Shown: piece after piece, positions 1 to 13,305 of the stretch | How positions within the stretch are numbered: the first letter of the stretch is position 1 | How the letters are laid out: each line of letters begins with the position of its first letter | IMG/VR virus record: IMGVR_UViG_3300044700_000691 | Span: 1 to 64,000 of that record | Direction: 5' to 3' (one strand) | Length of the DNA: 64,000 nucleotides | Notes under the pieces: generated by a model | What the model saw: the letters and a program-made list of their open reading frames with translations, nothing else | Database searches by the model: none | Told to the model about the DNA's origin: nothing | Program-made: the position numbers and the translations under genes

Positions 1-20
1 GTTACTTGATTTTCTTGCAT
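1..20 (-). CDS. 5' end of a gene running off the left edge (MQENQV...)
   Basis: ATG at 20, about 28 nt downstream of an early promoter box (48-56), same geometry as the other cassettes. Confidence 0.5.
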
Positions 21-47
21 ATTGTATATAGTTTAATTGATTATAAA

Positions 48-66
48 GTAAATATAAGTATTTTAT
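48..66 (-). promoter_or_regulatory. early promoter cassette, partial copy
   Basis: minus strand TATATTTAC box. Confidence 0.6.
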
Positions 67-314
67 TGATAAAATTGTATTTCGTCCACTATAAAAAAAT
101 GCTCCAAAATTAATACGTTTCTCAGATTGTTGAATTCCACAAAATCATCAAGATCATCAACATCCCATCCATCGGCCTCTCCTATTTCAGAAAAGAGTTT
201 TAATGACTTACTGATAATATCACCATATGACTCGGGAGACCAGGTATTTCCTATACATTCAACGACTTTTAACAGTCCAACCTCGTTGCTTTCGTTTTTT
301 ATTTGAAAAATCAT
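63..314 (-). CDS. hypothetical early protein, acidic, 83 aa
   Basis: ORF directly downstream of cassette 340-406. Confidence 0.75.
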   Translation of the reverse strand: MIFQIKNESNEVGLLKVVECIGNTWSPESYGDIISKSLKLFSEIGEADGWDVDDLDDFVEFNNLRNVLILEHFFIVDEIQFYQ

Positions 315-339
315 CTTTATTTGTTTTAATTAGTTATAA

Positions 340-406
340 GTAAATATAATACTTTTATTTGACAGTAAAAAACTTTTTGTTACTTATTTTCAAAAAGTTA
401 TTAACA
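340..406 (-). promoter_or_regulatory. early promoter cassette, full copy
   Basis: minus strand TGTTAATAAC-TTTTTGAAAATAAGT...TTTTTACTGTCAAATAAAAGTAT-TATATTTAC; resembles the Bacteroidota -33/-7 (TTTG/TAnnTTTG) promoter. Confidence 0.8.
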
Positions 407-423
407 CTGTAACTAAGTATAAC

Positions 424-936
424 CTATACCCCGATTGGGGTAAAGGTGTCGAAAAAGTCTACTGATGTCATTGCGGCTTTTACTCTCTCCAAACAAACAG
501 GTCCCATTGCAGTATTGATACTTTCTGGATGGGTTAATGGCAAGCCACATTTGCAGCAGGTCCCATTATGAAATAGACCTACTCGGGTTCCCAAAATTGT
601 AGGGTCCTTAATAGCAGCTACCACCCAGCCTAGAGCCTGTGCCAGTCGCGAGCTTGGTGTAACTCCTTTGCCCAATACATAGGTTAAGGGCTCGGCAAAT
701 AGGGTACCTGCAAACTGATGACCGCTACGCCCGTCCGCCAATAGAGAGATATTGACGTAGTAAATAGGCAGCATCTTTTTGCGATCCTCCTTGTCACGTA
801 ACTGCTTGATACGCACGTTCATGTGGGTAAGTTGTTCATTATTGCGGAAGGTGATGTTGGCTCTACCTGCAAGCGCCAAGGTTGGTAGTGACTTTGGATT
901 AAGGTTTGGCCGAGCTGCTCTGATTTGATTTGTCAT
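424..936 (-). CDS. DUF6011-like zinc-ribbon protein
   Basis: C-terminal CCKCGLPLTHPESINTAMGPVC motif. Confidence 0.7.
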   Translation of the reverse strand: MTNQIRAARPNLNPKSLPTLALAGRANITFRNNEQLTHMNVRIKQLRDKEDRKKMLPIYYVNISLLADGRSGHQFAGTLFAEPLTYVLGKGVTPSSRLAQALGWVVAAIKDPTILGTRVGLFHNGTCCKCGLPLTHPESINTAMGPVCLERVKAAMTSVDFFDTFTPIGV

Positions 937-959
937 ATGTAGTTAAGTTAATTGGTTAA

Positions 960-1026
960 GTAAATATAAGCAATTAGTTTGACAATAAAAAACTTTTATA
1001 CACTTATTTTCAAAAAGTTATTAACA
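960..1026 (-). promoter_or_regulatory. early promoter cassette, full copy
   Basis: near-identical to 340-406. Confidence 0.8.
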
Positions 1027-1118
1027 ATTTTCCTGTAATCCTAGCCAAATATAGAGGTAGGTCGGAGTATACCTCCCGCTTCCTTGTTCAGAACCGTCCC
1101 GTCTTATTGATTGATTGA
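1027..1118 (-). ncRNA. candidate small RNA or empty cassette (promoter with no ORF)
   Basis: full cassette at 1123-1190 points into about 90 nt of GC-richer sequence with only tiny ORFs and a GGAG/CTCC or GAGGTA/TACCTC hairpin. Confidence 0.3.
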
Positions 1119-1122
1119 CATA

Positions 1123-1190
1123 GTAAATATAAACAAAAAACCCCAAACTAAAAAATCTGGGGTCAATTATTTTTCAAAAAGTTATTAACA
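1123..1190 (-). promoter_or_regulatory. early promoter cassette with embedded terminator hairpin
   Basis: TATATTTAC and TGTTAATAAC boxes; minus strand stem CCCCAGA/TTTGGGG followed by T6. Confidence 0.75.
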
Positions 1191-1216
1191 AAAAAAGGGA
1201 GAACTTTCGCTCTCCC
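1191..1216 (-). terminator. intrinsic terminator
   Basis: minus strand GGGAGAGC-GAAA-GTTCTCCC followed by a T run. Confidence 0.75.
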
Positions 1217-1239
1217 AATTCTATCAATTAACTACTAAA

Positions 1240-1656
1240 CTAAAACTCACTTCGTAATACATCGAGTCTGGATTTTTCGTCGACGGTTAGTCCACTTAAA
1301 CCTTTAACTGAAATCAATTCCAATAAGTCATCCATTGTTAAGTGTGATGTGGAACTTGTTGGTGATGAGGTTTCACCTAAACCAAAAACTGATTTACGAA
1401 TTTTTTCTGGAAGATTAATATCGAAATCTTCTAAGGTCGTAACCATAAATGGAACTTCATTTAACTCACTATCGTTTTTAAAACGATCCCGAATTTGAGT
1501 TGGTGTCAACTCACTTTTAAAAACTGAGATAATAATTCCAGGAAGTGGAAGAATTTTTGCGTCAGTTTTGTTTAAAATAATTTCAGACATTAATACTTCT
1601 GAAACTCTTGGGTCTGGTCCCATTCCGAAACGGGCGAACACGATTTGATTTGACAT
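1240..1656 (-). CDS. hypothetical protein with DUF6576-like C-terminal motif
   Basis: MDDLLELISVKGLSGLTVDEKSRL resembles the Bacteroidota DxILDKIxxxGxxSLTxxEK motif. Confidence 0.6.
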   Translation of the reverse strand: MSNQIVFARFGMGPDPRVSEVLMSEIILNKTDAKILPLPGIIISVFKSELTPTQIRDRFKNDSELNEVPFMVTTLEDFDINLPEKIRKSVFGLGETSSPTSSTSHLTMDDLLELISVKGLSGLTVDEKSRLDVLRSEF

Positions 1657-1681
1657 ATGTTATTTTTTAATTGGTTATAGA

Positions 1682-1748
1682 GTAAATATAATACTTTTAT
1701 TTGACAGTAAAAAACTTTTTATTAATTATTTTCATAAAGTTATTAACA
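1682..1748 (-). promoter_or_regulatory. early promoter cassette, full copy
   Basis: repeat match. Confidence 0.8.
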
Positions 1749-1760
1749 ATTTGGGAGAGA

Positions 1761-1979
1761 CTAATCTTCTCTCTCCCATTCTTCAATGATCTCCGCACCA
1801 TAAAGTTCGCCACGACTTCCAAATCCAAATGTTCCTTCAAGAGTTGGACGACATAGGATTACTTTGAAGTTATATTCGTCTTCTTTGCAACACTCATTAA
1901 ACTCCGCTTGGGCTTTGTCTAGGTTTTCAGTTAAGAAATAGGAATCACCATCGTGATTAAGATTAATAATTACATACAT
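1761..1979 (-). CDS. hypothetical early protein, 72 aa
   Basis: ORF downstream of a cassette. Confidence 0.75.
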   Translation of the reverse strand: MYVIINLNHDGDSYFLTENLDKAQAEFNECCKEDEYNFKVILCRPTLEGTFGFGSRGELYGAEIIEEWERED

Positions 1980-2009
1980 ACATTTAAGGGTTTAGTTGAT
2001 TAATATAAA

Positions 2010-2066
2010 GCTAATATAATAAAAATAATTGACAGTAAAAAATATTTGAGCACGTATTTTCAAAAA
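2010..2066 (-). promoter_or_regulatory. early promoter cassette (TATATTAGC variant)
   Basis: repeat match, lacks the TGTTAATAA box. Confidence 0.7.
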
Positions 2067-2067
2067 A

Positions 2068-2223
2068 TTATGGGACTATAAAATCCCATAGCTCTTCGCC
2101 CGTAGGCTTGCCATCTCGCAGGATCTCGTAATTTGGATCCATGCCGCTGGACATGACATCATCGATAAGTTCTTGTAGAGTTGAGAATTCTTTCTTGTAG
2201 TAGCTGCAATCTAGTGTCCACAT
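2068..2223 (-). CDS. small hypothetical protein, 51 aa (MWTLDCSYYKKEF...WDFIVP), not in the ORF track
   Basis: translated by hand; sits directly behind cassette 2250-2317. Confidence 0.75.
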   Translation of the reverse strand: MWTLDCSYYKKEFSTLQELIDDVMSSGMDPNYEILRDGKPTGEELWDFIVP

Positions 2224-2249
2224 ATCTTCTTTAGTTAATTGGTTATAGA

Positions 2250-2317
2250 GCTAATATAATAAAAAATCCTCAAAGAAAAAAATCTTTGAGGACTTATTTT
2301 AAGAAAAGTTATTAACA
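2250..2317 (-). promoter_or_regulatory. early promoter cassette with embedded terminator hairpin
   Basis: stem TCCTCAAAG/CTTTGAGGA plus T6 on the minus strand, between the two boxes. Confidence 0.75.
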
Positions 2318-2321
2318 ATTC

Positions 2322-2549
2322 TTATAGTTCCATAACCAACTGGGCTAGCGTGCTAGCAAGCCAGTCTTGAATCTCCTTAAAAGCAGAGTCTGCTTCTTCT
2401 TGAGTGCCAAACGAAATGGTCTTAATTTGACGAGTAGTTTCCGGAAATGTAATACGGATTACCGCATTATTCAATTGGATTTCTTCGCCACCACCTAGGC
2501 AATATATTACCTTTGTGTCTTCTCTGTGTAGTACTAGTGTCTTTACCAT
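2322..2549 (-). CDS. hypothetical protein, 75 aa
   Basis: ORF translationally coupled to the upstream gene. Confidence 0.7.
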   Translation of the reverse strand: MVKTLVLHREDTKVIYCLGGGEEIQLNNAVIRITFPETTRQIKTISFGTQEEADSAFKEIQDWLASTLAQLVMEL

Positions 2550-2908
2550 TACTTAGTTGTGTTAGTTGTATTGGACTTAGGTGTAGTCTTTGCAGCTGGC
2601 TTGCCAGCCTTCTGCGCAGGTTTTGTAGAGGGCTTAGACGTCTTTGCAGTTGTCTTAGTTGTCTCTTTAGCAGGCTTCGTTGAATCTTTCTTACGAGAGT
2701 TCTTCTCAGCTTTAGTAGGGGCAGGCTTTACAGTTTCTTCGGCTACGATTGGATAAGGTTTTTTAACCTCTTCAACTTTTGCTTTAGGAATCTCATTAAC
2801 AACAGTTGACCATTTCTCGAATGAATCTACTACTTGCTTGTCCTTAACTACTTCTTGTTCTGCTTTACCTAACAATCCTTTAAACCAGTTTGCGATCGCT
2901 TTAAACAT
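2549..2908 (-). CDS. protein with Lys/Thr/Ala/Pro-rich basic tail (possible DNA binding)
   Basis: low-complexity KPAKETTKTTAKTSKP tail. Confidence 0.7.
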   Translation of the reverse strand: MFKAIANWFKGLLGKAEQEVVKDKQVVDSFEKWSTVVNEIPKAKVEEVKKPYPIVAEETVKPAPTKAEKNSRKKDSTKPAKETTKTTAKTSKPSTKPAQKAGKPAAKTTPKSNTTNTTK

Positions 2909-2972
2909 GAATATAAGTATTATTTTGATATCTTTTATTAGAATAAGCCAAAAGGTTTTAATACTAACCCAG

Positions 2973-3000
2973 AACAGGAGGTCGCTGGGACACTCCTGTT
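2973..3000. other. intergenic hairpin without U-tract
   Basis: AACAGGAG-GTC...GAC-A-CTCCTGTT inverted repeat upstream of 2549..2908. Confidence 0.45.
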
Positions 3001-3032
3001 GGATTATATTTCTTGATATAATAGAAACTATA

Positions 3033-3335
3033 TTACTGTGCTAAGAGTGCTGTCAACTCAATGAGAGCTTGCTCTGTAACAATATGGTTGTAACCACCAA
3101 TATGCCATTCAATCATTTCGTCTTTCCCAATTGGTCTATACTCTTTCCAATCATAAATTGTAAATATCTGTCCGTCTTCCAACTCGCACCTCCAGTCGAA
3201 GTTTACTTTATCCTCGCCAGTATTATCGCTATGCTGGGGCTCACCAATTGCTTGGGCTAATTGGTTATAAGAACATGTAATTACAGTGTCGTGGAACGAG
3301 GTTCCTGATCCAGGGTTAAAGCTTAGTTTTGCCAT
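3033..3335 (-). CDS. hypothetical phage protein, 100 aa
   Basis: ORF in leftward operon. Confidence 0.8.
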   Translation of the reverse strand: MAKLSFNPGSGTSFHDTVITCSYNQLAQAIGEPQHSDNTGEDKVNFDWRCELEDGQIFTIYDWKEYRPIGKDEMIEWHIGGYNHIVTEQALIELTALLAQ

Positions 3336-3356
3336 AGTTATATTTGATTTAATTGA

Positions 3357-3596
3357 TTACTTTAATTTCTTATACCATTCTAATATACCCACCATTTTTT
3401 GAATCTTTAGCTCTAGACCAAAGTTGCTTCCAACGAGACGACCTACTTTCATAGGATAATATCCCATCCCGTCTTTACCAGTTTCGTCCTTATCGATTTC
3501 TTTAATGGAGTTAGAGTGTTCCTCTAATTGAGTAATAAAGGAATCTATATCCTTCATTAATTCGTCATAGGCTCTCGCCTTTTCGTGTATCTTCAT
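3357..3596 (-). CDS. hypothetical protein, 79 aa
   Basis: ORF in operon. Confidence 0.75.
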   Translation of the reverse strand: MKIHEKARAYDELMKDIDSFITQLEEHSNSIKEIDKDETGKDGMGYYPMKVGRLVGSNFGLELKIQKMVGILEWYKKLK

Positions 3597-3602
3597 ATCT
3601 TT

Positions 3603-3914
3603 TTATTTTAATAGTTTAGTTGGTATTCCTACATTATAGACTAAGTTTGCAAAGAATTTTAATCCTTTGTATGTTGTATAATCTGCGCGACCAATCGCAC
3701 CCATAAGATCGTTAGCAACAAAGCTCTGTACAAAGCTTCCACCTTCATATCCTACCTTCCACTTAGTGCAGAGAATCGAGGTTCCTATATCAATAATATG
3801 AACTCTTTCACTTTCCGATAGGTCGACGAGTTCTGTCCATTGAGCATTATTATCAAGGTATATTTCTACCTCTGCCCTTACGATGTTAATCTGTTCTTCT
3901 CTTGTCATTTTCAT
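3603..3914 (-). CDS. hypothetical protein, 103 aa
   Basis: ORF in operon. Confidence 0.75.
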   Translation of the reverse strand: MKMTREEQINIVRAEVEIYLDNNAQWTELVDLSESERVHIIDIGTSILCTKWKVGYEGGSFVQSFVANDLMGAIGRADYTTYKGLKFFANLVYNVGIPTKLLK

Positions 3915-3930
3915 ATTGATTTGTTTATTA

Positions 3931-4212
3931 TTAAATTGCCTCAGTCAAACTAAGTGGAGCGATTATAATGCCTAATTTACCAGCTTCTTTTAAATGTATT
4001 TTGGTGCGGTTGATTTTAACAACTTCGAACGTTTTACCCGCAGCTTTAGGATGGTTAACTCTAACCGACATCCCAATTATTAAAGAACGTTTTACCATAC
4101 GCGCTTCTTGTCTGCGACGTAATTTAATAATGTCAATAAGATCTGCATTTAACTTTGAAAGGTCAGCAGTAGAAAGGGTGTTGATTTGAGAAAGGATTTG
4201 TGAGTAGTTCAT
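3931..4212 (-). CDS. hypothetical basic protein, 93 aa (SH3-like C-terminal half possible)
   Basis: first gene behind cassette 4239-4306. Confidence 0.75.
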   Translation of the reverse strand: MNYSQILSQINTLSTADLSKLNADLIDIIKLRRRQEARMVKRSLIIGMSVRVNHPKAAGKTFEVVKINRTKIHLKEAGKLGIIIAPLSLTEAI

Positions 4213-4238
4213 ATTATATCTTTGTTAGTTTGTTATAT

Positions 4239-4306
4239 GTAAATATAATAAAAAAACCTGAATTAAAAAAATCCAGGTTCATTTATTTTTAAAAAAGTTA
4301 TTAACA
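4239..4306 (-). promoter_or_regulatory. early promoter cassette with embedded terminator hairpin
   Basis: stem AACCTGGA/TTCAGGTT plus T run on the minus strand. Confidence 0.75.
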
Positions 4307-4308
4307 TT

Positions 4309-4452
4309 TTATTCTTCAGGTTTTCCATCTGGTCCCCATCTCTCTTTTTGTTCTTCTTCAAGATTATCAAGTTCTTTATCAAGATCCTTTAACCATTGGT
4401 CTAGCTCTTGTTGCGCAGCTGAGTCTGCCCCTTCTTTTTCTTTTGGATCCAT
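4309..4452 (-). CDS. small acidic protein, 47 aa (MDPKEKEGADS...), not in the ORF track
   Basis: hand translation; fills an operon gap. Confidence 0.6.
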   Translation of the reverse strand: MDPKEKEGADSAAQQELDQWLKDLDKELDNLEEEQKERWGPDGKPEE

Positions 4453-4461
4453 ACATCGAGA

Positions 4462-4626
4462 TTATTTTTTGCTTACTGCCCATATTTGTAAGAATGCCTT
4501 TAGCGGCAGATTCTTACGGTTTGCGAAGTGTTTAGCGGCGGCCAATCTGCCAGTTGTAAAAACTTTATCAACAGCCTCGGTTGATTTATCTAGTTTTGAG
4601 TAATAGTAATAGGTTCCTACTGACAT
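4462..4626 (-). CDS. small basic protein, 54 aa (MSVGTYYYYSK...), not in the ORF track
   Basis: hand translation; fills an operon gap. Confidence 0.65.
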   Translation of the reverse strand: MSVGTYYYYSKLDKSTEAVDKVFTTGRLAAAKHFANRKNLPLKAFLQIWAVSKK

Positions 4627-4663
4627 GATTCCTGGTTATATTATAGTATTATCTATTATTGTA

Positions 4664-4975
4664 CTATCGATTCGACTGCCGGGTTTCGCCTGTGCGACGA
4701 TTATATGCAAACTTTTCTCTTAGGCCAAGGTCTTCGTAAAGTAATATACCATTATTAAAAGAGAGAGGTTCTTGATTGGGTAATCCTAATCTATACATAC
4801 CTCTATTCTCGCCGGTTGCAGTAAAGAAATTAACCTCGCCTGTTTGAGACATGCAGCAGACCTCTTCTGAATCCCAACCTATAAGTTCATAGTTACCTAA
4901 TACAAACTGGGTTCGGGTCCCGTTGTCGTGCACCACGCTTGCAATACTACCCTGTTCTTCGACATAACTTATCAT
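4664..4975 (-). CDS. hypothetical protein, 103 aa
   Basis: ORF with 4-nt overlap with the upstream gene. Confidence 0.75.
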   Translation of the reverse strand: MISYVEEQGSIASVVHDNGTRTQFVLGNYELIGWDSEEVCCMSQTGEVNFFTATGENRGMYRLGLPNQEPLSFNNGILLYEDLGLREKFAYNRRTGETRQSNR

Positions 4976-5373
4976 AGTTTTCCTCCTTTTAATTGTTTAG
5001 TAAAGTCTTCTGGCTTTATGAATCCATCTTGAAGCATGTCTTCGTAGGCTGCGCCTTTTGCAGACTGCTTGTACATTACCTCGCCTGATTCGCTAAGCGC
5101 TGCATCAATTAATCCAGCGTCTACCATTTCAGAAATAGTATTTCTTATTTGGGCTTTCGCTGCAGAGTCTATCACTGCACTGACCTGCTCTTCAGTCAAG
5201 TTAGGATTTACAAAAGGAACTATATCATCCTTCATATTTTCCAGTGCAGCATTAGTTATATCAAGTAAAAGAGTTTCTTGATCTAGATCCCCTGCCTTAT
5301 CATTCTCTATAATTACTTCTGTTACTTCTAGCGCATAGCCTTTAGCTATCCATTGTTTAATTTGATCTGACAT
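4972..5373 (-). CDS. hypothetical acidic protein, 133 aa
   Basis: ORF downstream of the sigma gene. Confidence 0.75.
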   Translation of the reverse strand: MSDQIKQWIAKGYALEVTEVIIENDKAGDLDQETLLLDITNAALENMKDDIVPFVNPNLTEEQVSAVIDSAAKAQIRNTISEMVDAGLIDAALSESGEVMYKQSAKGAAYEDMLQDGFIKPEDFTKQLKGGKL

Positions 5374-5389
5374 TTTCTTTAGGATTTAA

Positions 5390-6106
5390 TTAGTTAAAAG
5401 TTTTACGTAATTTGTGACGAGCTAATCGAAGAGTTTGATTTACTTTAGAAACTTCCATTCCTAATTCATCAGCAGTTTCTTTAGCAGAGCGAGCTTCGCC
5501 TCTGTCGATTCCATAGAAAGTCTCGATTACCTTGCGATCATGGTCATTTAATTTGCTTAACACTGCGGCAACTTGTTGCTCAACGCTTTGTTCTTCAAAT
5601 GGATCCACGAATTCTGCACGAAGAATAAGATCGCCTAAGGTATTAGAACCATCTTCGCCGATTGGCTTGTCTAATCTAATATTAGTTAAGTTGATATCTT
5701 CGCCAGCCATTTTGCGCTTGTAGATATCGTATTCCTGATTCATAGGTAATCGTACAGTACGACCATACTCGCCTAGTGCAGTATTTAACTTCTTACGAAT
5801 CCAGAACTGTGCATAGGTAATAAACTTAACATCTTTTTCTGGAGTAAAACGCTTTGCAGCTTCGATAAGACCGCAGTTAGCTTCCATAATAAGATCGTCG
5901 ACAGGCAAGCCTAGTCCAATAAACTTATTCGCTAAGCTGACAGCGAACTTAAGGTTAGCATTTACTAGGGAGTGCATTGCAGCCTCGTCGCCGGCCTGAA
6001 TCCGGATAGCTAATTCTTTTTCCGCAGCCTTGCTTAAAGGCTTCGCCAGTTTGTCAATACTTTTAAAGTATGCTGGTAAGTTGGTTGATGCTTCAAATTT
6101 TGCCAT
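5390..6106 (-). CDS. RNA polymerase sigma-70 family factor (RpoD/RpoS-like, no region 1.1)
   Basis: region 1.2 (YFKSIDK..LSKAAEKELA), region 2 (LVNANLKFAVSLA, DDLIMEANCGLIEAAKRF, KFITYAQFWIR) and region 4 HTH. Confidence 0.92.
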   Translation of the reverse strand: MAKFEASTNLPAYFKSIDKLAKPLSKAAEKELAIRIQAGDEAAMHSLVNANLKFAVSLANKFIGLGLPVDDLIMEANCGLIEAAKRFTPEKDVKFITYAQFWIRKKLNTALGEYGRTVRLPMNQEYDIYKRKMAGEDINLTNIRLDKPIGEDGSNTLGDLILRAEFVDPFEEQSVEQQVAAVLSKLNDHDRKVIETFYGIDRGEARSAKETADELGMEVSKVNQTLRLARHKLRKTFN

Positions 6107-6137
6107 AGTTATTTTTTTAGATTGATTGATTTATAAT

Positions 6138-6194
6138 TTAAATATAATACTTTTATTTGACATAGTACAATGTTTTTTAATAAAGTTATTAACA
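6138..6194 (-). promoter_or_regulatory. early promoter cassette driving the sigma gene
   Basis: TATATTTAA box; TGTTAATAAC about 10 bp closer than in most copies. Confidence 0.75.
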
Positions 6195-6225
6195 TTGTCT
6201 ACTAGGGAGTGGCCCTAGCCGGGGT

Positions 6226-6618
6226 CTAGCCAAAGATTATATCTTCAAAGAACACGCTTTGTAGTACAACATCCGCAGTGCATGCATCGTCGTTTTCGTT
6301 TATCATATCTAGGAGATGGCTGGCTGGGGTCAAGGCCACGCGTTCATGTACATCCGCTAGGGTTACAGATCTAGTGTATTCGCCTTCACAGCCAATATCT
6401 ACTAGGGTAATCTTGTTACCATCACGTAAGATCTGCATTAAGACATCTTCAAAACAAGGGCTAGCACCGCCTGCTTTTAGTTTTGCAGCTGCGGTTTGGT
6501 ATTCCTTGTCGTCGAAATCCAGTTCTAAATCATAACCGCTAGTTACGTAGCCTAAGCCGTTACACATTGCGTTAAAGAATATTTCTTCCGCTTCATTTTT
6601 TTCTAAGAGTATTTTCAT
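6226..6618 (-). CDS. hypothetical protein, 130 aa
   Basis: ORF behind a cassette. Confidence 0.8.
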   Translation of the reverse strand: MKILLEKNEAEEIFFNAMCNGLGYVTSGYDLELDFDDKEYQTAAAKLKAGGASPCFEDVLMQILRDGNKITLVDIGCEGEYTRSVTLADVHERVALTPASHLLDMINENDDACTADVVLQSVFFEDIIFG

Positions 6619-6636
6619 GTTTGTTTATTTTATAAA

Positions 6637-6692
6637 GTAAATATAACTAAAATTATTGACAGTAAAAAATCTTTTTTCAAAAGTTATTAATA
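6637..6692 (-). promoter_or_regulatory. early promoter cassette
   Basis: repeat match. Confidence 0.75.
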
Positions 6693-6693
6693 A

Positions 6694-6900
6694 TTAGTCT
6701 TGTTCTAATATCTCAGTTACTTCAAATGTAACCATGTCAAAGGTTTCATCAATTGTTTCTTTATCATAGCCGGACTCTACTAAATGTTCGCGCGTACACT
6801 TCTCAGCATCGTCCGTTGTTTCGGCACGGATGTGGAAGATAATTGGACTTTCAAAATTTCCATCAAAGTCTGTAACTGATGTACAAAATAATCTTTTCAT
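6694..6900 (-). CDS. hypothetical acidic protein, 68 aa
   Basis: ORF behind a cassette. Confidence 0.75.
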   Translation of the reverse strand: MKRLFCTSVTDFDGNFESPIIFHIRAETTDDAEKCTREHLVESGYDKETIDETFDMVTFEVTEILEQD

Positions 6901-6926
6901 AATCTATAGGGTTTAATTGGTTATAA

Positions 6927-6994
6927 GTAAATATAATACTTTTATTTGACAGTAAAAAACTTTTAGGCACTTATTTTCCTAAAAGTTATTAACA
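6927..6994 (-). promoter_or_regulatory. early promoter cassette, full copy
   Basis: repeat match. Confidence 0.8.
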
Positions 6995-6996
6995 AT

Positions 6997-7176
6997 TTAC
7001 AGGATCTGCATCCCTACGTTTAATAATTCGTTTTTTAGGTTTCCATGCATTTTTTCAGTGCCACTAATTGAGAGAATTATCGTTGGCCCCTGTAGGGAAA
7101 CTATGTAATCCTGTTGGGTAAATCCATAAAGCTTTAGGAAAGCCTCTGCCTTTTCAATAATTTGCTTCTTTTTCAT
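6997..7176 (-). CDS. hypothetical protein, 59 aa (start moved to MKKKQII)
   Basis: track start 7212 lies inside the promoter; ATG at 7176 has the usual leader. Confidence 0.7.
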   Translation of the reverse strand: MKKKQIIEKAEAFLKLYGFTQQDYIVSLQGPTIILSISGTEKMHGNLKNELLNVGMQIL

Positions 7177-7198
7177 GTTATTAGGTTTTAAGTTATAA

Positions 7199-7235
7199 GT
7201 AAATATAACCAATTAAGTTGACACTAAAAAACTTT
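7199..7235 (-). promoter_or_regulatory. early promoter cassette, short copy
   Basis: TTTTTAGTGTCAA...TATATTTAC. Confidence 0.7.
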
Positions 7236-7238
7236 GTA

Positions 7239-7427
7239 TCACTTTTTTTCTTTCATTAAATAAATCGAAAGGAATGGGGTGCCAAAGATTATAACATAAA
7301 AACAAATAGCAACTAGGATTGGCGACGAGGGTTTGGCTGGAATTTCCATTGGACCATCAGTTGCGCACATAAGAATAAAGACTAATAACCAGCTAAAGAA
7401 TAAAAGGGTTCCGATAAATTGTTTCAT
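7239..7427 (-). CDS. small two-TM membrane protein
   Basis: two hydrophobic segments. Confidence 0.7.
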   Translation of the reverse strand: MKQFIGTLLFFSWLLVFILMCATDGPMEIPAKPSSPILVAICFYVIIFGTPFLSIYLMKEKK

Positions 7428-7455
7428 AGTAAAAGGTTTAATTATTAATTGATAT

Positions 7456-7495
7456 GTAAATATAACTAAAATACTTGAAAGTAAAAAATTTATTT
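7456..7495 (-). promoter_or_regulatory. early promoter cassette, short copy
   Basis: repeat match. Confidence 0.65.
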
Positions 7496-7569
7496 TAGGG
7501 AATCTTTCCTAAAAGAAAAAGGCCCTATTACTAGGACCCTCTCTCATTATTAACCAATCAATCAAACTA

Positions 7570-7959
7570 TTATTTCTTCTCTCTACTAATAACTATCTTA
7601 CCAACTTTAGAATCTCTTTTGGCAATAGCGACATCAACAGTTAGGATTCCGTCGATAAGCTTGGCTGTAATAGATTCTCTACGGCTAGGCAGACCAAACT
7701 GGAATTCCTGCGCAGGAATCCAACTGGCTTTCTTAGCCTTAACAACTAGATAATCATTAACAATATCGATATCAATTTCTTCTTCAGTACGGCCAGCAAT
7801 AATCATTCGATACTGTGCAAGTTCGTCTGTAATTTTGACATCATAGTTGTCTGACTGATGTGTAGTTGACATTAGTGTAGACCACATTGGGTCGCGTAAT
7901 CCTTTTAGGATTTCTTGAGTTAGGCTCGGTTCTCCCGAGAAAAAAGTACGTAATAACAT
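7570..7959 (-). CDS. small heat-shock protein (Hsp20/alpha-crystallin)
   Basis: AGRTEEEIDIDIVNDYLVVK, ITAKLIDGILTVDV and a C-terminal IxI. Confidence 0.8.
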   Translation of the reverse strand: MLLRTFFSGEPSLTQEILKGLRDPMWSTLMSTTHQSDNYDVKITDELAQYRMIIAGRTEEEIDIDIVNDYLVVKAKKASWIPAQEFQFGLPSRRESITAKLIDGILTVDVAIAKRDSKVGKIVISREKK

Positions 7960-7988
7960 GTTACATATAATTATTTTAATATTAATAG

Positions 7989-8062
7989 ATCAAATTTGGT
8001 GCCAAATACTATTTTATGACAAAGTGTCCTACCAACTCAAGGTCAATAGGACAATGTGTCAT
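7989..8062 (-). promoter_or_regulatory. sigma54-like promoter with paired upstream palindromic sites
   Basis: minus strand TGGCAC-N5-TTGAT (7989-8004); inverted 16-mers at 8016-8031 and 8047-8062, each containing GACA-N3-TGTC. Confidence 0.5.
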
Positions 8063-8075
8063 GTTAAATATAGTA

Positions 8076-8315
8076 TTACTTATATTTAGATAGGATTTCT
8101 CTATGGACATGGTTAGCCCAACTATTAAAATCCGCCTGCTCCTTTGGTTCAACCGTTCGCATAACACGAGGACCATTACCATAGCTAAGATCTAAGGTTT
8201 CGCCAACCGGCTCAGTTATCATGTTCCTACGAATTAACATCTCTATTCCGCTTAGGAATCTTATGATACCTGTTTTTACCTTTTTCACTGCCGATTGTTG
8301 TTTATTATTTGTCAT
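8076..8315 (-). CDS. hypothetical protein, 79 aa
   Basis: ORF in operon. Confidence 0.7.
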   Translation of the reverse strand: MTNNKQQSAVKKVKTGIIRFLSGIEMLIRRNMITEPVGETLDLSYGNGPRVMRTVEPKEQADFNSWANHVHREILSKYK

Positions 8316-8316
8316 A

Positions 8317-8493
8317 TTATTGAACTTTAAGTTTAGTTAATAATTCTTTCTTAATCATTTCTGGCCAGGCTTTCGCAAATAGCGGGGTCTTGCCTTGATC
8401 TTCGATTGCTTGAATCTCCTTTTGGACTCCTTCGACCCATAATTCTAATCCAGCCCTTAGTGCTTCTTTTTCTACGTTAGTTAGTTTTGCCAT
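8317..8493 (-). CDS. small protein, 58 aa (MAKLTNVEKEAL...), not in the ORF track
   Basis: hand translation. Confidence 0.7.
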   Translation of the reverse strand: MAKLTNVEKEALRAGLELWVEGVQKEIQAIEDQGKTPLFAKAWPEMIKKELLTKLKVQ

Positions 8494-8498
8494 AACCT

Positions 8499-8645
8499 TT
8501 ATTTTTTATTTACTTCGTAATTATTGACTGCATCAATTACTATTTTACAAATGGTATCAAGTACTTCGTCATCATGTCCATCTAAGTAAGTAATTAGGTT
8601 AAACTGTAAAATTTCTTTTAACTCTCTTGTTGTTTTAATTTCCAT
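8499..8645 (-). CDS. small protein, 48 aa (MEIKTTRELKEIL...), not in the ORF track
   Basis: hand translation; first gene behind cassette 8673. Confidence 0.7.
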   Translation of the reverse strand: MEIKTTRELKEILQFNLITYLDGHDDEVLDTICKIVIDAVNNYEVNKK

Positions 8646-8672
8646 ATCCTTTTTGTTTTTATTGATTATACT

Positions 8673-8722
8673 GTAAATATAATACTTTTATTTGACAGTA
8701 AAAAATTTTTAATAGATTATTT
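8673..8722 (-). promoter_or_regulatory. early promoter cassette
   Basis: repeat match. Confidence 0.75.
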
Positions 8723-8851
8723 TTAATCCATCCATTTACCATCATGTATCAAATGCCAAAACCTATGCTTTAATACTTCGATTATTAGGGAACCTAAGCT
8801 ATCGCACTTGTAAACTCCAGCACCTTTTACTATAAGTTTGAATTTAGACAT
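8723..8851 (-). CDS. small protein, 42 aa (MSKFKLIVKGAG...), not in the ORF track
   Basis: hand translation; AT-rich start region. Confidence 0.6.
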   Translation of the reverse strand: MSKFKLIVKGAGVYKCDSLGSLIIEVLKHRFWHLIHDGKWMD

Positions 8852-8873
8852 TATATTTGTTGTTTAATAATTA

Positions 8874-9158
8874 TTACTTCATTTTAATTAAGGGTACGAT
8901 CGAGACCTGGCAGTGCTGGGCTTCGGGATTGTATAATGCTTCTTCTTCAGTATTCCACTTGCTCCTATCCCATAGGAGAACTGGCCTGCTCGCCGCTTCT
9001 CGACATAGGGTTTTGTATTCAATATTTAGGGTCTTTGCATCCAGTTGGACCTTAGTAAATTGGTGTACCCCTTTCAGTGTGGTTAGCACGCTGCGACCGG
9101 TTAGGATATCTGAATTCCAGATCTCGACTAACCATAGCCTGTCTTTCTTTGTCTTCAT
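8874..9158 (-). CDS. hypothetical protein, 94 aa
   Basis: ORF in operon. Confidence 0.7.
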   Translation of the reverse strand: MKTKKDRLWLVEIWNSDILTGRSVLTTLKGVHQFTKVQLDAKTLNIEYKTLCREAASRPVLLWDRSKWNTEEEALYNPEAQHCQVSIVPLIKMK

Positions 9159-9159
9159 A

Positions 9160-9369
9160 TTATCTTATACTCCCTTTAGTATCACTAGATTCTCTTGAGA
9201 ATCCAGCAATCGCGTATAGTATTCCCATTGCTCCGCTTAACATAAAGAATCCCATTTCATTTAATGTTCCTGCAAATGGGATAACCTTTCCGACATGACC
9301 GCTCGCAGTTAAGAACGCAATTGATAAGAATAAGACTGAACCCAATAAAAATTTAATAGATGCTTTCAT
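9160..9369 (-). CDS. small two-TM membrane protein
   Basis: two hydrophobic segments; behind cassette 9398. Confidence 0.7.
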   Translation of the reverse strand: MKASIKFLLGSVLFLSIAFLTASGHVGKVIPFAGTLNEMGFFMLSGAMGILYAIAGFSRESSDTKGSIR

Positions 9370-9397
9370 AATAGATTGTTTAGGTTATTAATGATAT

Positions 9398-9455
9398 GTA
9401 AATATAAACAATTAAGTTGACACTAAAAAACTTTTTATTACTTATTTTTCAAAAA
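9398..9455 (-). promoter_or_regulatory. early promoter cassette
   Basis: repeat match. Confidence 0.75.
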
Positions 9456-9479
9456 AAAACCTGCCTTACGGGGCAGGTT
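9451..9479 (-). terminator. intrinsic terminator
   Basis: AACCTGCC/GGCAGGTT stem with a T run on the minus strand. Confidence 0.75.
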
Positions 9480-9501
9480 CAAGGCTTAAGAGATTCTCTA
9501 C

Positions 9502-9810
9502 TTAGACAAGTTGAGAATTCTTGATACGACCGCGGGTCATATCGAAAGCTTTGTTTACAATCTTTGCATTTTGGTACAAGCCACCGATAACTTCACTTGT
9601 GTAGTTAGGCGAGAATCCAGTACGTGCAGCTACTTTCACTAAGTCGCCTTGACGTAGACGAGAGTTAATAACTGCTAATTTTGCTGTGTAAGGCAATTTG
9701 CGATAGGTCATGCCTATCTTGGTTTGGTTTGCTGTGTTTGACATTGTAGTCGGTTTGGTTTTAAATTTTGCAGTAAATGCTGCAAATGCTTTCTTTATAG
9801 ACATAGACAT
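9502..9810 (-). CDS. small basic helix-turn-helix DNA-binding protein
   Basis: GDLVKVAARTGFSPNYTSEVIGG HTH-like segment; true start may be further in. Confidence 0.6.
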   Translation of the reverse strand: MSMSIKKAFAAFTAKFKTKPTTMSNTANQTKIGMTYRKLPYTAKLAVINSRLRQGDLVKVAARTGFSPNYTSEVIGGLYQNAKIVNKAFDMTRGRIKNSQLV

Positions 9811-9834
9811 TTTATATTGTTTAGATTATTATAC

Positions 9835-10062
9835 CTACCCCTTTGGCTTATTGGCATCTGCGATAGCACTCCTAATTGCACCAGTTCCCATTACTGTCTT
9901 GCCGATAACCATCCAGCCCATTGCGGAGAGCCAGGTAATTTCGTGTAGACCTTGATCAGGGCCAATGCTATTCCATATTACCTTAAGAAAAAAGGCTTCG
10001 AGCATAAAGCTACAGACACCGACAAATAGTTTGTAAATTGCTTCTTTTGTTTTAGTTGACAT
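9835..10062 (-). CDS. small membrane protein, 75 aa
   Basis: hydrophobic segments. Confidence 0.7.
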   Translation of the reverse strand: MSTKTKEAIYKLFVGVCSFMLEAFFLKVIWNSIGPDQGLHEITWLSAMGWMVIGKTVMGTGAIRSAIADANKPKG

Positions 10063-10127
10063 ATTATATCCAGTTTAAGATTTTAAATAATACTTTCGCG
10101 ACTATAAAGAACACGATTATCTTTAGG

Positions 10128-10158
10128 GCTAATATACCCAATTTCTCGATAGTTGACA
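10128..10158 (-). promoter_or_regulatory. degenerate early promoter cassette
   Basis: TGTCAA...TATATTAGC. Confidence 0.45.
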
Positions 10159-10167
10159 AGAGGCTGG

Positions 10168-10470
10168 TCATATGCTGCTGTTGAAAAATAGCTTTACCTC
10201 TTTACGACCTCTAGTATTACCAAGCTTTACCTCGCTCTCGGTAATTTCTATTTCAATTACCCTGACCCCATTTGCAAAATGGTGCTTATCAAATCTGAGT
10301 CTCCCTTCGTTGGTAAATCTCTCGACAACTTCGCCACCTCTTAGCCTGCTAAACTCGGCCTCGCTAAGGGTTAACTCTTGCCCAATACTCCAGTGGACAG
10401 GCTTTACACTACGACCTGACTCTTCGCGAATAGGTTCGGTAACGGTTAATTTAAATTCTTTGTGTATCAT
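10168..10470 (-). CDS. hypothetical protein, 100 aa
   Basis: ORF behind cassette 10492. Confidence 0.7.
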   Translation of the reverse strand: MIHKEFKLTVTEPIREESGRSVKPVHWSIGQELTLSEAEFSRLRGGEVVERFTNEGRLRFDKHHFANGVRVIEIEITESEVKLGNTRGRKEVKLFFNSSI

Positions 10471-10491
10471 CGTATATCATTTAGTTATAGA

Positions 10492-10538
10492 GTAAATATA
10501 ACCAATTAACTTGACACCCAAAAATAAAGTTATTAACA
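10492..10538 (-). promoter_or_regulatory. early promoter cassette
   Basis: TATATTTAC, with TGTTAATAAC about 20 bp closer than in most copies. Confidence 0.75.
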
Positions 10539-10718
10539 ATTATCCCAGCTAGTCGGGCTATCTTCAGCTGTTACCTGCCAAAACTGGCCAAGGTTATCGC
10601 GCACAGTTAGCACGTCTGGTGCTACTACTTCTACAATACCCGTGATAGGGGCTTCTAGCTCTTCGAATTTCTGTAACCATTGGATAGTATCTCCCGGTTT
10701 AAAGTCTTGTATCTGCAT
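10533..10718 (-). CDS. small SH3/KOW-like protein, 61 aa
   Basis: FKPGDTIQW...GIVEVV pattern. Confidence 0.65.
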   Translation of the reverse strand: MQIQDFKPGDTIQWLQKFEELEAPITGIVEVVAPDVLTVRDNLGQFWQVTAEDSPTSWDNC

Positions 10719-10721
10719 ATG

Positions 10722-11027
10722 TTATAGTTTGTTTATAGCTGCTTCGCGTTTAACCCGATAGAATAACTCAGCAGCCCATTCATATTCTTCCCTAGCAACC
10801 GCCACGTCGAGCGCAGTAATACAGGCATGGTATAGAGCATGTAATAAGTATTCAAGATACTCTGCACTCCAATCCTCTTCGCCTGCTGTTTTACCTAGGT
10901 CTTCGACTATCTTGCCTAGACAGTGGCGTATCGCCTGCTGGTCTCGACCTACTCCTTCCAGCCCAGTAAGGATTCGGTCTTTAATTAGTGTAGATAAGTA
11001 TTCAGGCATCTCCTTTTGGTTTAGCAT
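10722..11027 (-). CDS. hypothetical protein with UVR-like motif
   Basis: AVAREEYEWAAEL. Confidence 0.7.
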   Translation of the reverse strand: MLNQKEMPEYLSTLIKDRILTGLEGVGRDQQAIRHCLGKIVEDLGKTAGEEDWSAEYLEYLLHALYHACITALDVAVAREEYEWAAELFYRVKREAAINKL

Positions 11028-11033
11028 TATAGT

Positions 11034-11041
11034 TATTATAC
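11034..11041 (-). promoter_or_regulatory. middle-class promoter box GTATAATA (representative; also at 9827, 18326, 19157, 33941, 38341, 40537, 41136, 47538, 48458, 63979)
   Basis: exact 8-mer just upstream of minus-strand non-structural genes. Confidence 0.6.
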
Positions 11042-11094
11042 TAGGCTAGGGGTATAGGTTTACCTGCGCAGAGTAGGTACAGGGCTAGTGCAAT

Positions 11095-11492: not shown

Positions 11493-11500
11493 TTTTGCTA

Positions 11501-11507
11501 ATAAATA
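11501..11507 (+). promoter_or_regulatory. late-class promoter ATAAATA (representative; also + at 14318, 18367, 19195, 24669, 25548, 28288, 33961 and - at 13964, 32561, 33122, 42451, 46450, 50213, 53610, 57118, 63909)
   Basis: resembles T4 late TATAAATA; precedes structural and leader-bearing genes. Confidence 0.65.
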
Positions 11508-11532
11508 TCTTTATAACTATAACAATATTATT

Positions 11533-11958: not shown

Positions 11959-11961
11959 TCT

Positions 11962-12612: not shown

Positions 12613-12614
12613 CT

Positions 12615-13278: not shown

Positions 13279-13305
13279 AGTAATTTAAGATATAGGTGAG
13301 TCTAG

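What the first reader, a model, noticed from the sequence alone, without database searches (positions are those of the whole stretch)
398..10538. DnaA-box-like site TTATTAACA is helically phased to the early promoter
Seen: exact TTATTAACA at 398, 1018, 1182, 1740, 2309, 4298, 6186, 6986 and 10530 (variant at 6684). Its offset from the promoter box is 58-59 bp in seven copies, 47-48 bp in two and 38 bp in one, i.e. it moves only in whole helical turns. Known: face-of-helix dependence marks upstream activators contacting RNA polymerase, and the motif matches the relaxed DnaA box TT(A/T)TNCACA at 8 of 9 positions. Inference: early genes are switched on by one factor, possibly host DnaA. That would couple lytic commitment to host replication state and could titrate DnaA away from oriC.
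Basis: partly seen in the sequence, partly recalled or inferred. Interest (0 to 1): 0.7.

Follow-up and report, generated by a model that had tools for sequence, protein, structure and literature searches.

The report
Phased DnaA-box-like site on phage promoters
A freshwater Bacteroidota jumbo phage and its relatives place a 10-base site, resembling the host replication initiator's (DnaA) binding site, upstream of most early promoters at distances that change only in 10-base steps, so a protein bound there probably touches RNA polymerase, though which protein is untested.

Summary
The genes in 1-11 kb lie on the minus strand. Read in gene direction, the site is TGTTAATAAC. It sits upstream of 10 of 16 copies of a Bacteroidota-type early promoter (T-run/TGTCAA, then TATATTTA). 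In the window it lies 58/59 (x7), 48, 47 and 38 bp from the -7 box.

In related phages whose sigma protein is only 50-62% identical, 81 non-redundant units with a recognisable box have the site at 38 (15), 48 (19) or 57-60 (about 45), plus 2 tandem copies at 70, and never in between. The step is 10.4 bp. It is produced by adding or removing about 10-bp A/T-tract modules.

The DnaA idea fares better than a match to the E. coli consensus suggests:
- Bacteroidota DnaA boxes tolerate A at position 6.
- They carry the same CTT flank as the phage site.
- TTATTAACA itself occurs inside 11-bp-phased DnaA-box arrays.

Three points count against it:
- That variant makes up only about 5% of host boxes, yet the phages use it in 69 of 69 sites.
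- This choice creates a palindrome, GTTAnTAAC.
- About 40% of promoters, and one whole lineage, lack the site.

Verdict: a real, conserved, phase-locked upstream promoter element. DnaA is the leading but unproven ligand.

The parts
397..406 (-). site TGTTAATAAC (gene direction); 58 bp from its 5' end to TATATTTA at 341-348
1017..1026 (-). site TGTTAATAAC; 58 bp to TATATTTA at 961-968. It follows the small non-coding unit.
1181..1190 (-). site TGTTAATAAC; 59 bp to TATATTTA at 1124-1131. Its first T ends the T-run of the terminator at 1216-1197.
1739..1748 (-). site TGTTAATAAC; 58 bp to TATATTTA at 1683-1690
2308..2317 (-). site TGTTAATAAC; 59 bp to TATATTAG at 2251-2258
4297..4306 (-). site TGTTAATAAC; 59 bp to TATATTTA at 4240-4247
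6185..6194 (-). site TGTTAATAAC; 48 bp to TATATTTA at 6139-6146. This is the promoter of the sigma-factor gene at 5390-6106.
6683..6692 (-). variant site TATTAATAAC; 47 bp to TATATTTA at 6638-6645
6985..6994 (-). site TGTTAATAAC; 59 bp to TATATTTA at 6928-6935
10529..10538 (-). site TGTTAATAAC; 38 bp to TATATTTA at 10493-10500. It also supplies the stop codon of ORF 10533-10718.
340..396 (-). long-class promoter body. In gene direction: CTTTTTGAAAATAAGT module, AAAAAG module, TTTTTTACTGTCAA (-33 region), then the -7 box TTATATTTAC at 340-349. The same layout occurs at 960-1016, 1682-1738 and 6927-6984.
1123..1180 (-). long-class promoter in which a GC hairpin plus T-run (1164-1139) replaces the TGTCAA element, while the loop keeps TTTTTT at the -33 place. 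The same occurs at 2250-2307 (hairpin 2295-2264) and 4239-4296 (hairpin 4280-4254).
6138..6184 (-). medium-class promoter body, one 10-bp module shorter. The same occurs at 6637-6682.
10492..10528 (-). short-class promoter body, in which the site abuts the T-run/GTGTCAA element
48..57 (-). -7 box TTATATTTAC of a promoter copy without the site
2010..2019 (-). -7 box of a promoter copy without the site. The terminator at 2090-2069 occupies the site's place.
7199..7208 (-). -7 box of a promoter copy without the site
7456..7465 (-). -7 box of a promoter copy without the site
8673..8682 (-). -7 box of a promoter copy without the site
9398..9407 (-). -7 box of a promoter copy without the site. The terminator at 9480-9457 abuts the A/T module.

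Best explanation
TGTTAATAAC(TTT), read on the gene (minus) strand, is a protein-binding upstream element of the phage's early promoters.

The promoters. They are of the host (Bacteroidota primary sigma) type: a T-run plus TGTCAA around -33, and TATATTT(A/G), which matches TAnnTTTG, at -7.

The spacing. Between the site and the -33 region lie zero, one or two A/T-tract modules of about 10 bp each. The site centre therefore falls near -45, -55 or -65. These positions are inferred, because the transcription start is not mapped. In all three cases the site faces the same side of the helix.

The ligand. The site is a rare variant of the extended Bacteroidota DnaA box, TGT(G/T)NATAA-CTT. The most likely ligand is host DnaA. 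Bound weakly to a single low-affinity box, DnaA would depend on, and in turn stabilise or gate, RNA polymerase at the adjacent promoter. That mutual dependence would explain the phase-locking.

Shown: the anatomy, the conservation, the 10.4-bp quantisation, and the fit to host DnaA boxes including the flank.
Inferred: that a protein binds (about 0.8), that it is DnaA (about 0.45), and that the effect is activation rather than timed repression.
For: - Enrichment and co-orientation of the site.
- It is part of a repeated promoter unit restricted to the first 10.5 kb: 16 of 22 minus-strand box matches in 217 kb fall there.
- The region encodes a sigma-70-family protein and many small ORFs, as early regions do.
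- The same 10-mer lies upstream of the same promoter in more than 10 relatives whose sigma protein is only 50-62% identical. Neighbouring module positions vary, but the 10-mer does not.
- Distances fall only at 38, 48 and 57-60.
- Host comparison: the partner-box profile is TTAT-N-(C/A)-ACA. The host flank is C 64-68%, T 52-70%, T 52-75%, against phage 97/99/93%.
- TTATTAACA lies in DnaA-box clusters upstream of dnaA in all 5 occurrences among 30 loci, and 3 of these are in 11-bp tandems.
- It appears in a trio TTATCAACA-cc-TTATTAACA-ac-TTATACACA.
- 39 tandem pairs against 0 controls in 251 genomes, of which 2 contain TTATTAACA.
- DnaA is a known transcription factor that can stabilise RNA polymerase (nrdAB) and stimulates lambda pR through the beta subunit (PMC8203912).
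Against: - The phages use the TA variant exclusively (69 of 69). Host tandem partners are CC 18, CA 13 and TA 2 of 39. Selection for a generic DnaA box would allow or favour CC and CA.
- T5/A6 is exactly the pair that makes the palindrome GTTAnTAAC, which hints at a dimeric reader.
- A lone weak box is normally poorly occupied by DnaA.
- About 40% of promoters, and all those seen in lineage L009, lack the site.
- The box repertoire of the predicted host order could not be established. Flavobacteriales dnaA loci have almost no canonical boxes, and tandem pairs there barely exceed the control (18 against 9).
- The site is not enriched in five Bacteroidota genomes apart from phage contigs binned with them.
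- No binding, transcription-start or activity data exist. RNA contigs break at the repeats.
Confidence: 0.45

Rival explanations
1. The site is read by another sequence-specific protein that recognises the 9-bp palindrome GTTAnTAAC. Candidates are a host transcription factor, a virion-delivered phage protein, or an early phage protein that later shuts the early promoters off. On this view the likeness to DnaA boxes is partial convergence on an A/T-rich sequence.
For: - T5 and A6, the two positions DnaA leaves free, are invariant in 69 of 69 sites. They are exactly what completes the palindrome.
- Lineage L009 keeps the promoter and its modules but has no site, as expected if a lineage-specific factor was lost.
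- The site is not a common element of the Bacteroidota genomes tested.
Against: - T1 is invariant (69 of 69 by construction of the search, and T in the aligned consensus) but lies outside the palindrome. Its mirror position is T, not A, so the conserved 10-mer is asymmetric.
- The CTT flank match to host DnaA boxes would be coincidence, at roughly 2% by composition.
- No DNA-binding domain other than sigma was found among about 30 early ORFs.
- No literature reports such a motif.
Confidence: 0.3
2. DnaA binds the sites, but their purpose is not transcription initiation. They would recruit DnaA for phage replication (transcription-activated origins), or soak up DnaA to block host initiation.
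For: The DnaA-box likeness is as above. There are ten sites per genome copy. DnaA-dependent transcriptional activation of ori-lambda is a precedent (PMC8203912).
Against: Replication or titration does not need a fixed helical face relative to the -7 box. No cluster of canonical boxes exists anywhere in the 217-kb record. A weak variant is a poor sink for DnaA.
Confidence: 0.1
3. No dedicated factor is involved. The site is the distal part of an UP-element-like, intrinsically bent A/T region contacted by the RNA polymerase alpha C-terminal domains, which also work only at whole-turn displacements.
For: The modules between the site and the -33 region are A- and T-tracts of about 10 bp, placed where UP subsites lie. 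Motif-less promoters keep these modules.
Against: UP subsites are degenerate A/T tracts. Here a 10-mer with an invariant G and C is conserved while the neighbouring A/T modules drift.
Confidence: 0.08
4. The site is a boundary or RNA-level element of recombining gene cassettes (terminator arm, stop codons, recombination hotspot) with no role in initiation. It would be conserved by concerted evolution of the repeats.
For: - It lies at the 5' edge of the repeat, right after terminators.
- In relatives an inverted copy plus the site forms the terminator hairpin of a small RNA, with G-U-preserving changes.
- Two ORFs use its TAA as their stop codon.
- Metatranscriptome contigs show alternative joints between promoter repeats.
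Against: Only the small-RNA unit has the complementary arm. The stops fall in one frame only. Concerted evolution does not explain invariance across genomes whose adjacent bases differ, nor the strict 10-bp classes.
Confidence: 0.07

Closest known systems
DnaA boxes and DnaA as a transcription factor (E. coli dnaA and nrdAB promoters; DnaA-stimulated lambda pR / ori-lambda)
   Same: A 9-mer of the TTATNCACA type with a G flank. A DnaA box next to a promoter can stabilise RNA polymerase, and a phage promoter (lambda pR) is DnaA-stimulated (PMC8203912). The phage site fits the Bacteroidota box profile and flank.
   Different: A single box of a rare variant (T5 A6) is used, never the consensus. 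It is repeated on most early promoters of a lytic jumbo phage, lies upstream at three phased positions (in lambda the boxes act from downstream), and has no binding data.
Class I / class II activator sites such as CRP (own knowledge: functional at -41.5, -61.5, -71.5 and so on, but not at half-turn offsets)
   Same: Discrete positions one helical turn apart, with A/T-rich DNA between the site and the -35 or -33 region where alpha-CTD could sit.
   Different: A 10-bp asymmetric site rather than a 22-bp palindrome. The factor is unknown, and activation has not been shown.
UP elements of rrnB P1 and T4 early promoters (own knowledge)
   Same: A/T-tract modules at about -40 to -60 on strong phage early promoters, with dependence on whole-turn displacement.
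   Different: The TGTTAATAAC block is sequence-invariant and contains G and C, unlike degenerate UP subsites.
PeSL (promoter-early stem-loop) cassettes of T4-type phages (Arbiol et al. 2010, own knowledge)
   Same: Repeated early promoter plus stem-loop units flanking small early ORFs. Alternative joints between repeats in related strains suggest shuffling.
   Different: Bacteroidota -33/-7 promoters, and an extra phased upstream site that PeSLs lack.
bS21-encoding freshwater Bacteroidetes myoviruses (Chen et al. 2022, PMC9723584)
   Same: This phage encodes bS21 (window 41662-41814). It is a large freshwater myovirus-like genome (baseplate and terminase). Predicted hosts are Bacteroidetes, with one Flavobacterium spacer link.
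   Different: That paper does not mention promoters, early genes or sigma factors (0 occurrences). The promoter architecture is not described there.

Membership tests
DnaA box | Matches the general 9-mer consensus TTATNCACA / TT(A/T)TNCACA | tested here: not met
   8 of 9: position 6 is A, not C (sequence). From own knowledge, C6 is required by E. coli DnaA.
DnaA box | Matches the box repertoire actually used in the host phylum | tested here: met
   Partners at +/-11 bp of canonical boxes in 30 Bacteroidota dnaA loci: position 5 is C27/T5/G4/A3 and position 6 is C29/A10, so TTATTAACA fits at 9 of 9. Among 39 tandem partners in 251 genomes: CC 18, CA 13, TA 2.
DnaA box | Extended flank of host boxes (TGTNNATAA followed by C-T-T) | tested here: met
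   Host: C 64-68%, T 52-70%, T 52-75%. Phage: 97%, 99%, 93%.
DnaA box | The same 9-mer occurs inside authentic phased DnaA-box arrays | tested here: met
   L051 TTATTAACA-ac-TTATTAACA and L059 TTTTCCACA-ac-TTATTAACA, both upstream of dnaA. L078 trio, and three pairs with TTATCCACA. 5 hits against 1 control in 401 genomes.
DnaA box | Copies vary at the positions DnaA leaves free, and include consensus boxes | tested here: not met
   69 of 69 phage sites are T5 A6. No canonical box lies at the phased positions, and only 2 scattered TTATCCACA occur in 217 kb.
DnaA box | Bound by DnaA | not testable with these tools
   The complex prediction with DNA was not folded and gives no evidence.
Face-of-helix-dependent upstream activator site | Allowed positions differ by whole helical turns | tested here: met
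   38, 48 and 57-60 only, in 81 units from more than 10 genomes. Period 10.4 bp. One outlier at 12 bp (L030).
Face-of-helix-dependent upstream activator site | The site raises promoter activity, and half-turn insertions abolish the effect | not testable with these tools
   No transcription-start or activity data; RNA contigs break at the repeats.
Bacteroidota primary-sigma promoter (-33 TTTG / -7 TAnnTTTG; own knowledge, Bayley et al. 2000) | A -7 element TAnnTTTG, with a -33 TTTG 19-21 bp upstream | tested here: inconclusive
   -7: TATATTTA here and TATATTTG in relatives. -33: a T-run (TTTT/TTTA) at the right distance, but G is usually missing, and a conserved TGTCAA fills the spacer.
UP element | Degenerate A/T tracts at -40 to -60 without invariant G/C | tested here: not met
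   The site has an invariant G2 and C10. The modules between the site and the -33 region do fit.

The most novel reading that the evidence does not exclude
A whole family of freshwater Bacteroidota jumbo phages wires most of its early promoters to the host replication initiator. A deliberately weak, phase-locked DnaA box would let DnaA (probably the ATP form) and RNA polymerase bind cooperatively. Early transcription would then read out, or be timed by, the host's replication state.
Probability: 0.35. Interest if true: 0.8.

Novelty: new variant of a known kind. Interest (0 to 1): 0.62.

Why it matters
Almost nothing is known about how phages of Bacteroidota start their transcription programme. 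Upstream activation in this phylum's unusual -33/-7 promoters is also poorly understood.

Here the sequence data alone give a natural 'spacing mutagenesis' series: about 80 promoters with the site at 38, 48 or 58-60 bp. This makes a face-of-helix mechanism directly testable.

If the ligand is DnaA, this would be the first case of a phage gating its early gene set through the replication initiator. It would also show that Bacteroidota DnaA boxes have an extended, phylum-specific form (TGTKNATAA-CTT, with A tolerated at position 6).

If the ligand is another protein, the site is a handle for finding a new regulator by pull-down. Either way, the promoter modules are candidate strong, tunable parts for Flavobacteriia and Bacteroidota genetics.

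Tried and rejected
- Nucleotide search of the phage collection with 1-12 kb: no match.
- Exact promoter pattern in viral contigs: no match. Relatives were found through the sigma protein instead.
- Metatranscriptome contigs (X13, X16-X18) laid on 1-6000: the region is present in RNA libraries, but contigs break at the 31-mer repeats, so they give no transcription starts.
- Rfam on 1-14 kb: only sub-threshold noise.
- Literature search for the motif strings: only the GUIDE-seq tag oligo.
- Pfam on about 30 early ORFs: no DNA-binding domain except sigma.
- The phage encodes no DnaA C-terminal domain.
- Site counts in five Bacteroidota genomes: not above the reversed-pattern control, apart from binned phage contigs.
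- Distance from host DnaA boxes to the dnaA -7 box: only three related genomes gave a value (67 bp), which is uninformative.
- Flavobacteriales dnaA loci: almost no canonical boxes near dnaA. Tandem pairs number 18 against 9 control, 5 of them with TTATTAACA. Inspected cases are isolated pairs of unclear function, so this is inconclusive.
- Complex prediction with the DnaA DNA-binding domain plus site DNA: not folded, no verdict, no evidence either way.
- All-frame stop module: rejected, because the stops fall in one frame only.
- IHF and Fis consensus: rejected by inspection.
- Second cryptic DnaA box in the A/T module: rejected (14-bp offset, and two mismatches at conserved positions).

Full report
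**1. What is there**

The window is the first 64 kb of a 216,815-bp linear virus record, estimated 84% complete and about 36% G+C. It encodes a large terminase, a T4-type baseplate wedge protein and a DNA ligase. It also encodes ribosomal protein bS21. This places it among the freshwater bS21-encoding myoviruses predicted to infect Bacteroidetes (PMC9723584).

TTATTAACA occurs 12 times in the window, against 2.3 expected. Nine copies lie on the + strand between 398 and 10538. The ORFs in 1-11.4 kb are on the minus strand, so in gene direction the site reads TGTTAATAA. With its invariant next base it is the 10-mer TGTTAATAAC.

**2. Anatomy of the promoter unit**

The site is the 5' edge of a repeated intergenic unit. 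In gene direction the unit runs as follows:
- the stop codon of the preceding gene, often followed by a hairpin or terminator;
- TGTTAATAAC;
- a module like CTTTTTGAAAATAAGT;
- a module like nnnnAAAAAG;
- TTTTTTA(C/G)TGTCAA;
- about 11 nt;
- TTATATTTAC;
- a conserved leader (ATAACCAATTAA);
- ATG.

TATATTTA (TATATTTG in relatives) matches the Bacteroidota -7 element TAnnTTTG. A T-run lies where the -33 TTTG is expected. Both statements rest on my own knowledge of that promoter type; the transcription start is not mapped.

Sixteen such boxes lie in 1-10.5 kb, all on the minus strand, and nowhere else in the 217 kb beyond chance matches. The region has about 35 small ORFs. Among them are a sigma-70-family protein (5390-6106), an Hsp20-like protein and a DUF6011 protein. 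No other recognisable DNA-binding protein was found. This is the picture of an early region transcribed by the host polymerase.

Ten of the 16 promoters carry the site, one of them as the variant TATTAATAAC. Six do not. In three units (boxes at 1132, 2259 and 4248) a GC-rich hairpin plus T-run replaces the TGTCAA element, but its loop keeps TTTTTT at the -33 place.

**3. The spacing claim**

In the window, the distance from the site's 5' end to TATATTTA is 58 or 59 bp in seven units, and 48, 47 and 38 bp in one unit each. Three deviant copies alone would be only suggestive.

Using the early sigma protein as a probe, I fetched 24 related loci from IMG/VR, with 38-62% protein identity. The closer relatives (50-62%) have the same promoter and the same 10-mer, always in the same orientation, with up to 15 copies per 20 kb.

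Of 84 non-redundant sites, 81 have a recognisable box. After two mis-called first matches (listed at 21 and 51 bp, really 59 and 60) are corrected, the distances are:

| Distance (bp) | Units |
|---|---|
| 38 | 15 |
| 48 | 19 |
| 57-60 | about 45 |
| 70 (tandem duplicates; the inner copy is at 58) | 2 |
| 39-47 or 49-56 | 0 |

One-mismatch variants also sit only at in-phase positions. The mean of the long class is 58.8, so the step is 10.4 bp.

The classes differ by whole modules. The short class is the site plus TTTA plus the T-run. The medium class adds a module like nTGAAAATAAA. The long class adds a further module like TCACAAAAAG. Different genomes prefer different classes, and most have two or three of them.

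One exception is L030, a more distant relative, where the site lies 12 bp from a box.

The quantisation is therefore real, conserved and built from 10-bp A/T-tract modules. Within the units the 10-mer is invariant while the neighbouring module positions vary. This argues for selection on the site itself rather than mere repeat homogenisation.

**4. Is it a DnaA box?**

Against the E. coli-type consensus, the site fails at position 6 (A for C). By my own knowledge that base is critical in E. coli. I therefore derived the repertoire of the relevant phylum.

- *Box profile.* In 30 Bacteroidota dnaA loci, canonical boxes cluster beside dnaA. The 9-mers lying exactly 11 bp from canonical boxes give T, T, A>T, T, C>T/G/A, C(29)/A(10), A, C, A. 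A at position 6 is thus common (TTATCAACA), and TTATTAACA is allowed at all nine positions.
- *Occurrences near dnaA.* All five TTATTAACA occurrences in those loci lie in the box cluster upstream of dnaA, on the same strand as the canonical boxes. Three are in 11-bp tandems.
- *Flank.* In gene direction, host boxes are followed by C (64-68%), T (52-70%), T (52-75%). The phage site is followed by C, T, T in 97, 99 and 93% of copies. This match lies outside the 9-mer and would arise by composition only about 2% of the time.
- *Wider scans.* The pattern TTATNNACA-NN-TTATCCACA gives 39 hits and no control hit in 251 genomes, with NN being CC 18, CA 13, TA 2, GC 2 and four singletons. TTATTAACA-NN-TTWTNCACA gives 5 hits against 1 control in 401 genomes, including a phased trio.
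- *Other phyla.* A scan of 185,579 species' genomes for the site plus its first module also hit an oriC-like DnaA-box array in a Firmicute, and a Saprospiraceae locus with DnaA-type boxes. It further hit phage-like promoters on contigs binned with Bacteroidota MAGs.

TTATTAACA is therefore a genuine but minor (about 5%) member of the Bacteroidota DnaA-box repertoire, and the phage site shares the phylum-specific flank.

**5. What speaks against DnaA**

- The phages never use the common variants: 69 of 69 sites are T5 A6. No consensus box sits at a phased position, and no box cluster exists anywhere in the genome.
- T5 A6 is precisely the combination that turns G-TTATNNAC into the palindrome GTTAnTAAC. 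A dimeric reader would explain that invariance. However, the equally conserved T1 breaks the symmetry.
- About 40% of family promoters lack the site, and lineage L009 has the promoter and modules with no site at all. The site therefore modulates rather than defines early transcription.
- For the predicted host order I could not establish the repertoire. Flavobacteriales dnaA loci have almost no canonical boxes, and tandem pairs barely exceed the control. Five of the 18 pairs do contain TTATTAACA.
- A structure-based test was not possible, and RNA contigs gave no 5' ends.

**6. Mechanism proposed**

*Shown.* A conserved 10-mer lies at three positions one helical turn apart, upstream of host-type early promoters. 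It is separated from the -33 region by 0, 1 or 2 A/T-tract modules that resemble UP subsites.

*Inferred.* A protein bound to the site contacts RNA polymerase on one face, either directly in the short class or across alpha-CTD-bound modules in the longer classes. This is analogous to class II and class I activation.

DnaA is the best candidate (about 0.45). A single weak box would be occupied only cooperatively with polymerase. That would both explain the phase constraint and make output sensitive to the DnaA (ATP) level. The direction of the effect is open: it could be activation at infection, or shut-off when DnaA-ATP accumulates after host replication stops.

*Rivals.* These are another palindrome-reading factor (0.3), DnaA recruitment for replication or titration (0.1), a pure UP or curvature element (0.08), and a cassette-boundary or RNA element (0.07).

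**7. Comparison and novelty**

The components are all known: DnaA as a transcription factor, including at lambda pR (PMC8203912); face-of-helix activators; UP elements; and repeated promoter/stem-loop cassettes in T4-type phages. The combination has not been described in the literature I could search. That combination is a rare DnaA-box variant phase-locked to most early promoters of a phage family, in a phylum with unusual promoters. The paper on the related bS21 phages mentions neither promoters nor early genes. I rate it a new variant of a known kind, with interest 0.62.

Noticed in passing
window 1027-1121 (minus strand), after the promoter box at 1123-1132: A non-coding unit of about 95 nt with a core conserved in relatives L012, L015, L018, L023 and L025 (GACGGGACGGTTC..GAACAAGGAAGCGGGAGGTATACTCCGACC). 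There is no ORF and no Rfam match. In relatives its 3' hairpin is formed by an inverted copy of the site pairing with the next promoter's TGTTAATAAC, followed by a T-run, and A-to-G changes keep G-U pairs. It is probably a small early RNA.
   Followed up: partly
window 5390-6106 (-); also 57945-58142 (-) and genome 119731-119877 (-): A sigma-70-family gene (regions 1.2, 2 and 4) sits inside the early region, behind a medium-class promoter. Two further sigma-like genes lie elsewhere. This suggests a sigma cascade for middle and late genes.
   Followed up: partly
window 41662-41814 (-): A ribosomal protein bS21 gene. It links this genome to the bS21-encoding freshwater Bacteroidetes phages of Chen et al. 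2022 (PMC9723584).
   Followed up: partly
window 1139-1164, 2264-2295, 4254-4280 (-): Three promoter copies have a GC-rich terminator hairpin plus T-run embedded between the A/T modules and the -7 box, replacing the TGTCAA element. The hairpin loop keeps TTTTTT at the -33 position. These look like overlapping terminator/promoter units.
   Followed up: partly
window 34->959, 1706->4286, 1752->4242 (joints in run X13): Metatranscriptome contigs from another lake sample join different promoter repeats, with short unique linkers. This implies related strains in which gene cassettes between promoter units are deleted or swapped, as in PeSL-like shuffling. Assembly artefacts are not excluded.
   Followed up: no
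window about 6197-6240 (-), and upstream of short/medium-class promoters in L012, L013, L015, L018, L024, L025, L026 and L030: A conserved element GGCCGG(A/T)CTCCCTAGT lies 3-8 nt upstream of the site, or of the modules when the site is absent. In the window it forms part of CTAGGG..CCCTAG inverted repeats. Its function is unknown.
   Followed up: no
window 34075-34408 (+): A Glu/Ala/Pro-rich low-complexity repeat (GAAGAAG.. units) inside a coding region.
   Followed up: no
window 10000-14000: G+C rises to 0.44-0.45, against about 0.35 elsewhere, at the point where the coding strand switches near 11.4 kb (the end of the early block).
   Followed up: no
L048, L051, L056 (Bacteroidota dnaA upstream regions): A palindrome GTGAAACGTTTCAC lies immediately after the tandem DnaA-box pair in several unrelated Bacteroidota genomes. 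It may be a second conserved regulatory or origin element.
   Followed up: no
L048-L077 (30 Bacteroidota dnaA loci): Bacteroidota DnaA boxes have an extended consensus TGT(G/T)GATAA-CTT. TTATCAACA is nearly as common as TTATCCACA (25 against 44). This phylum-specific relaxation at position 6 does not seem to be built into the usual consensus.
   Followed up: partly
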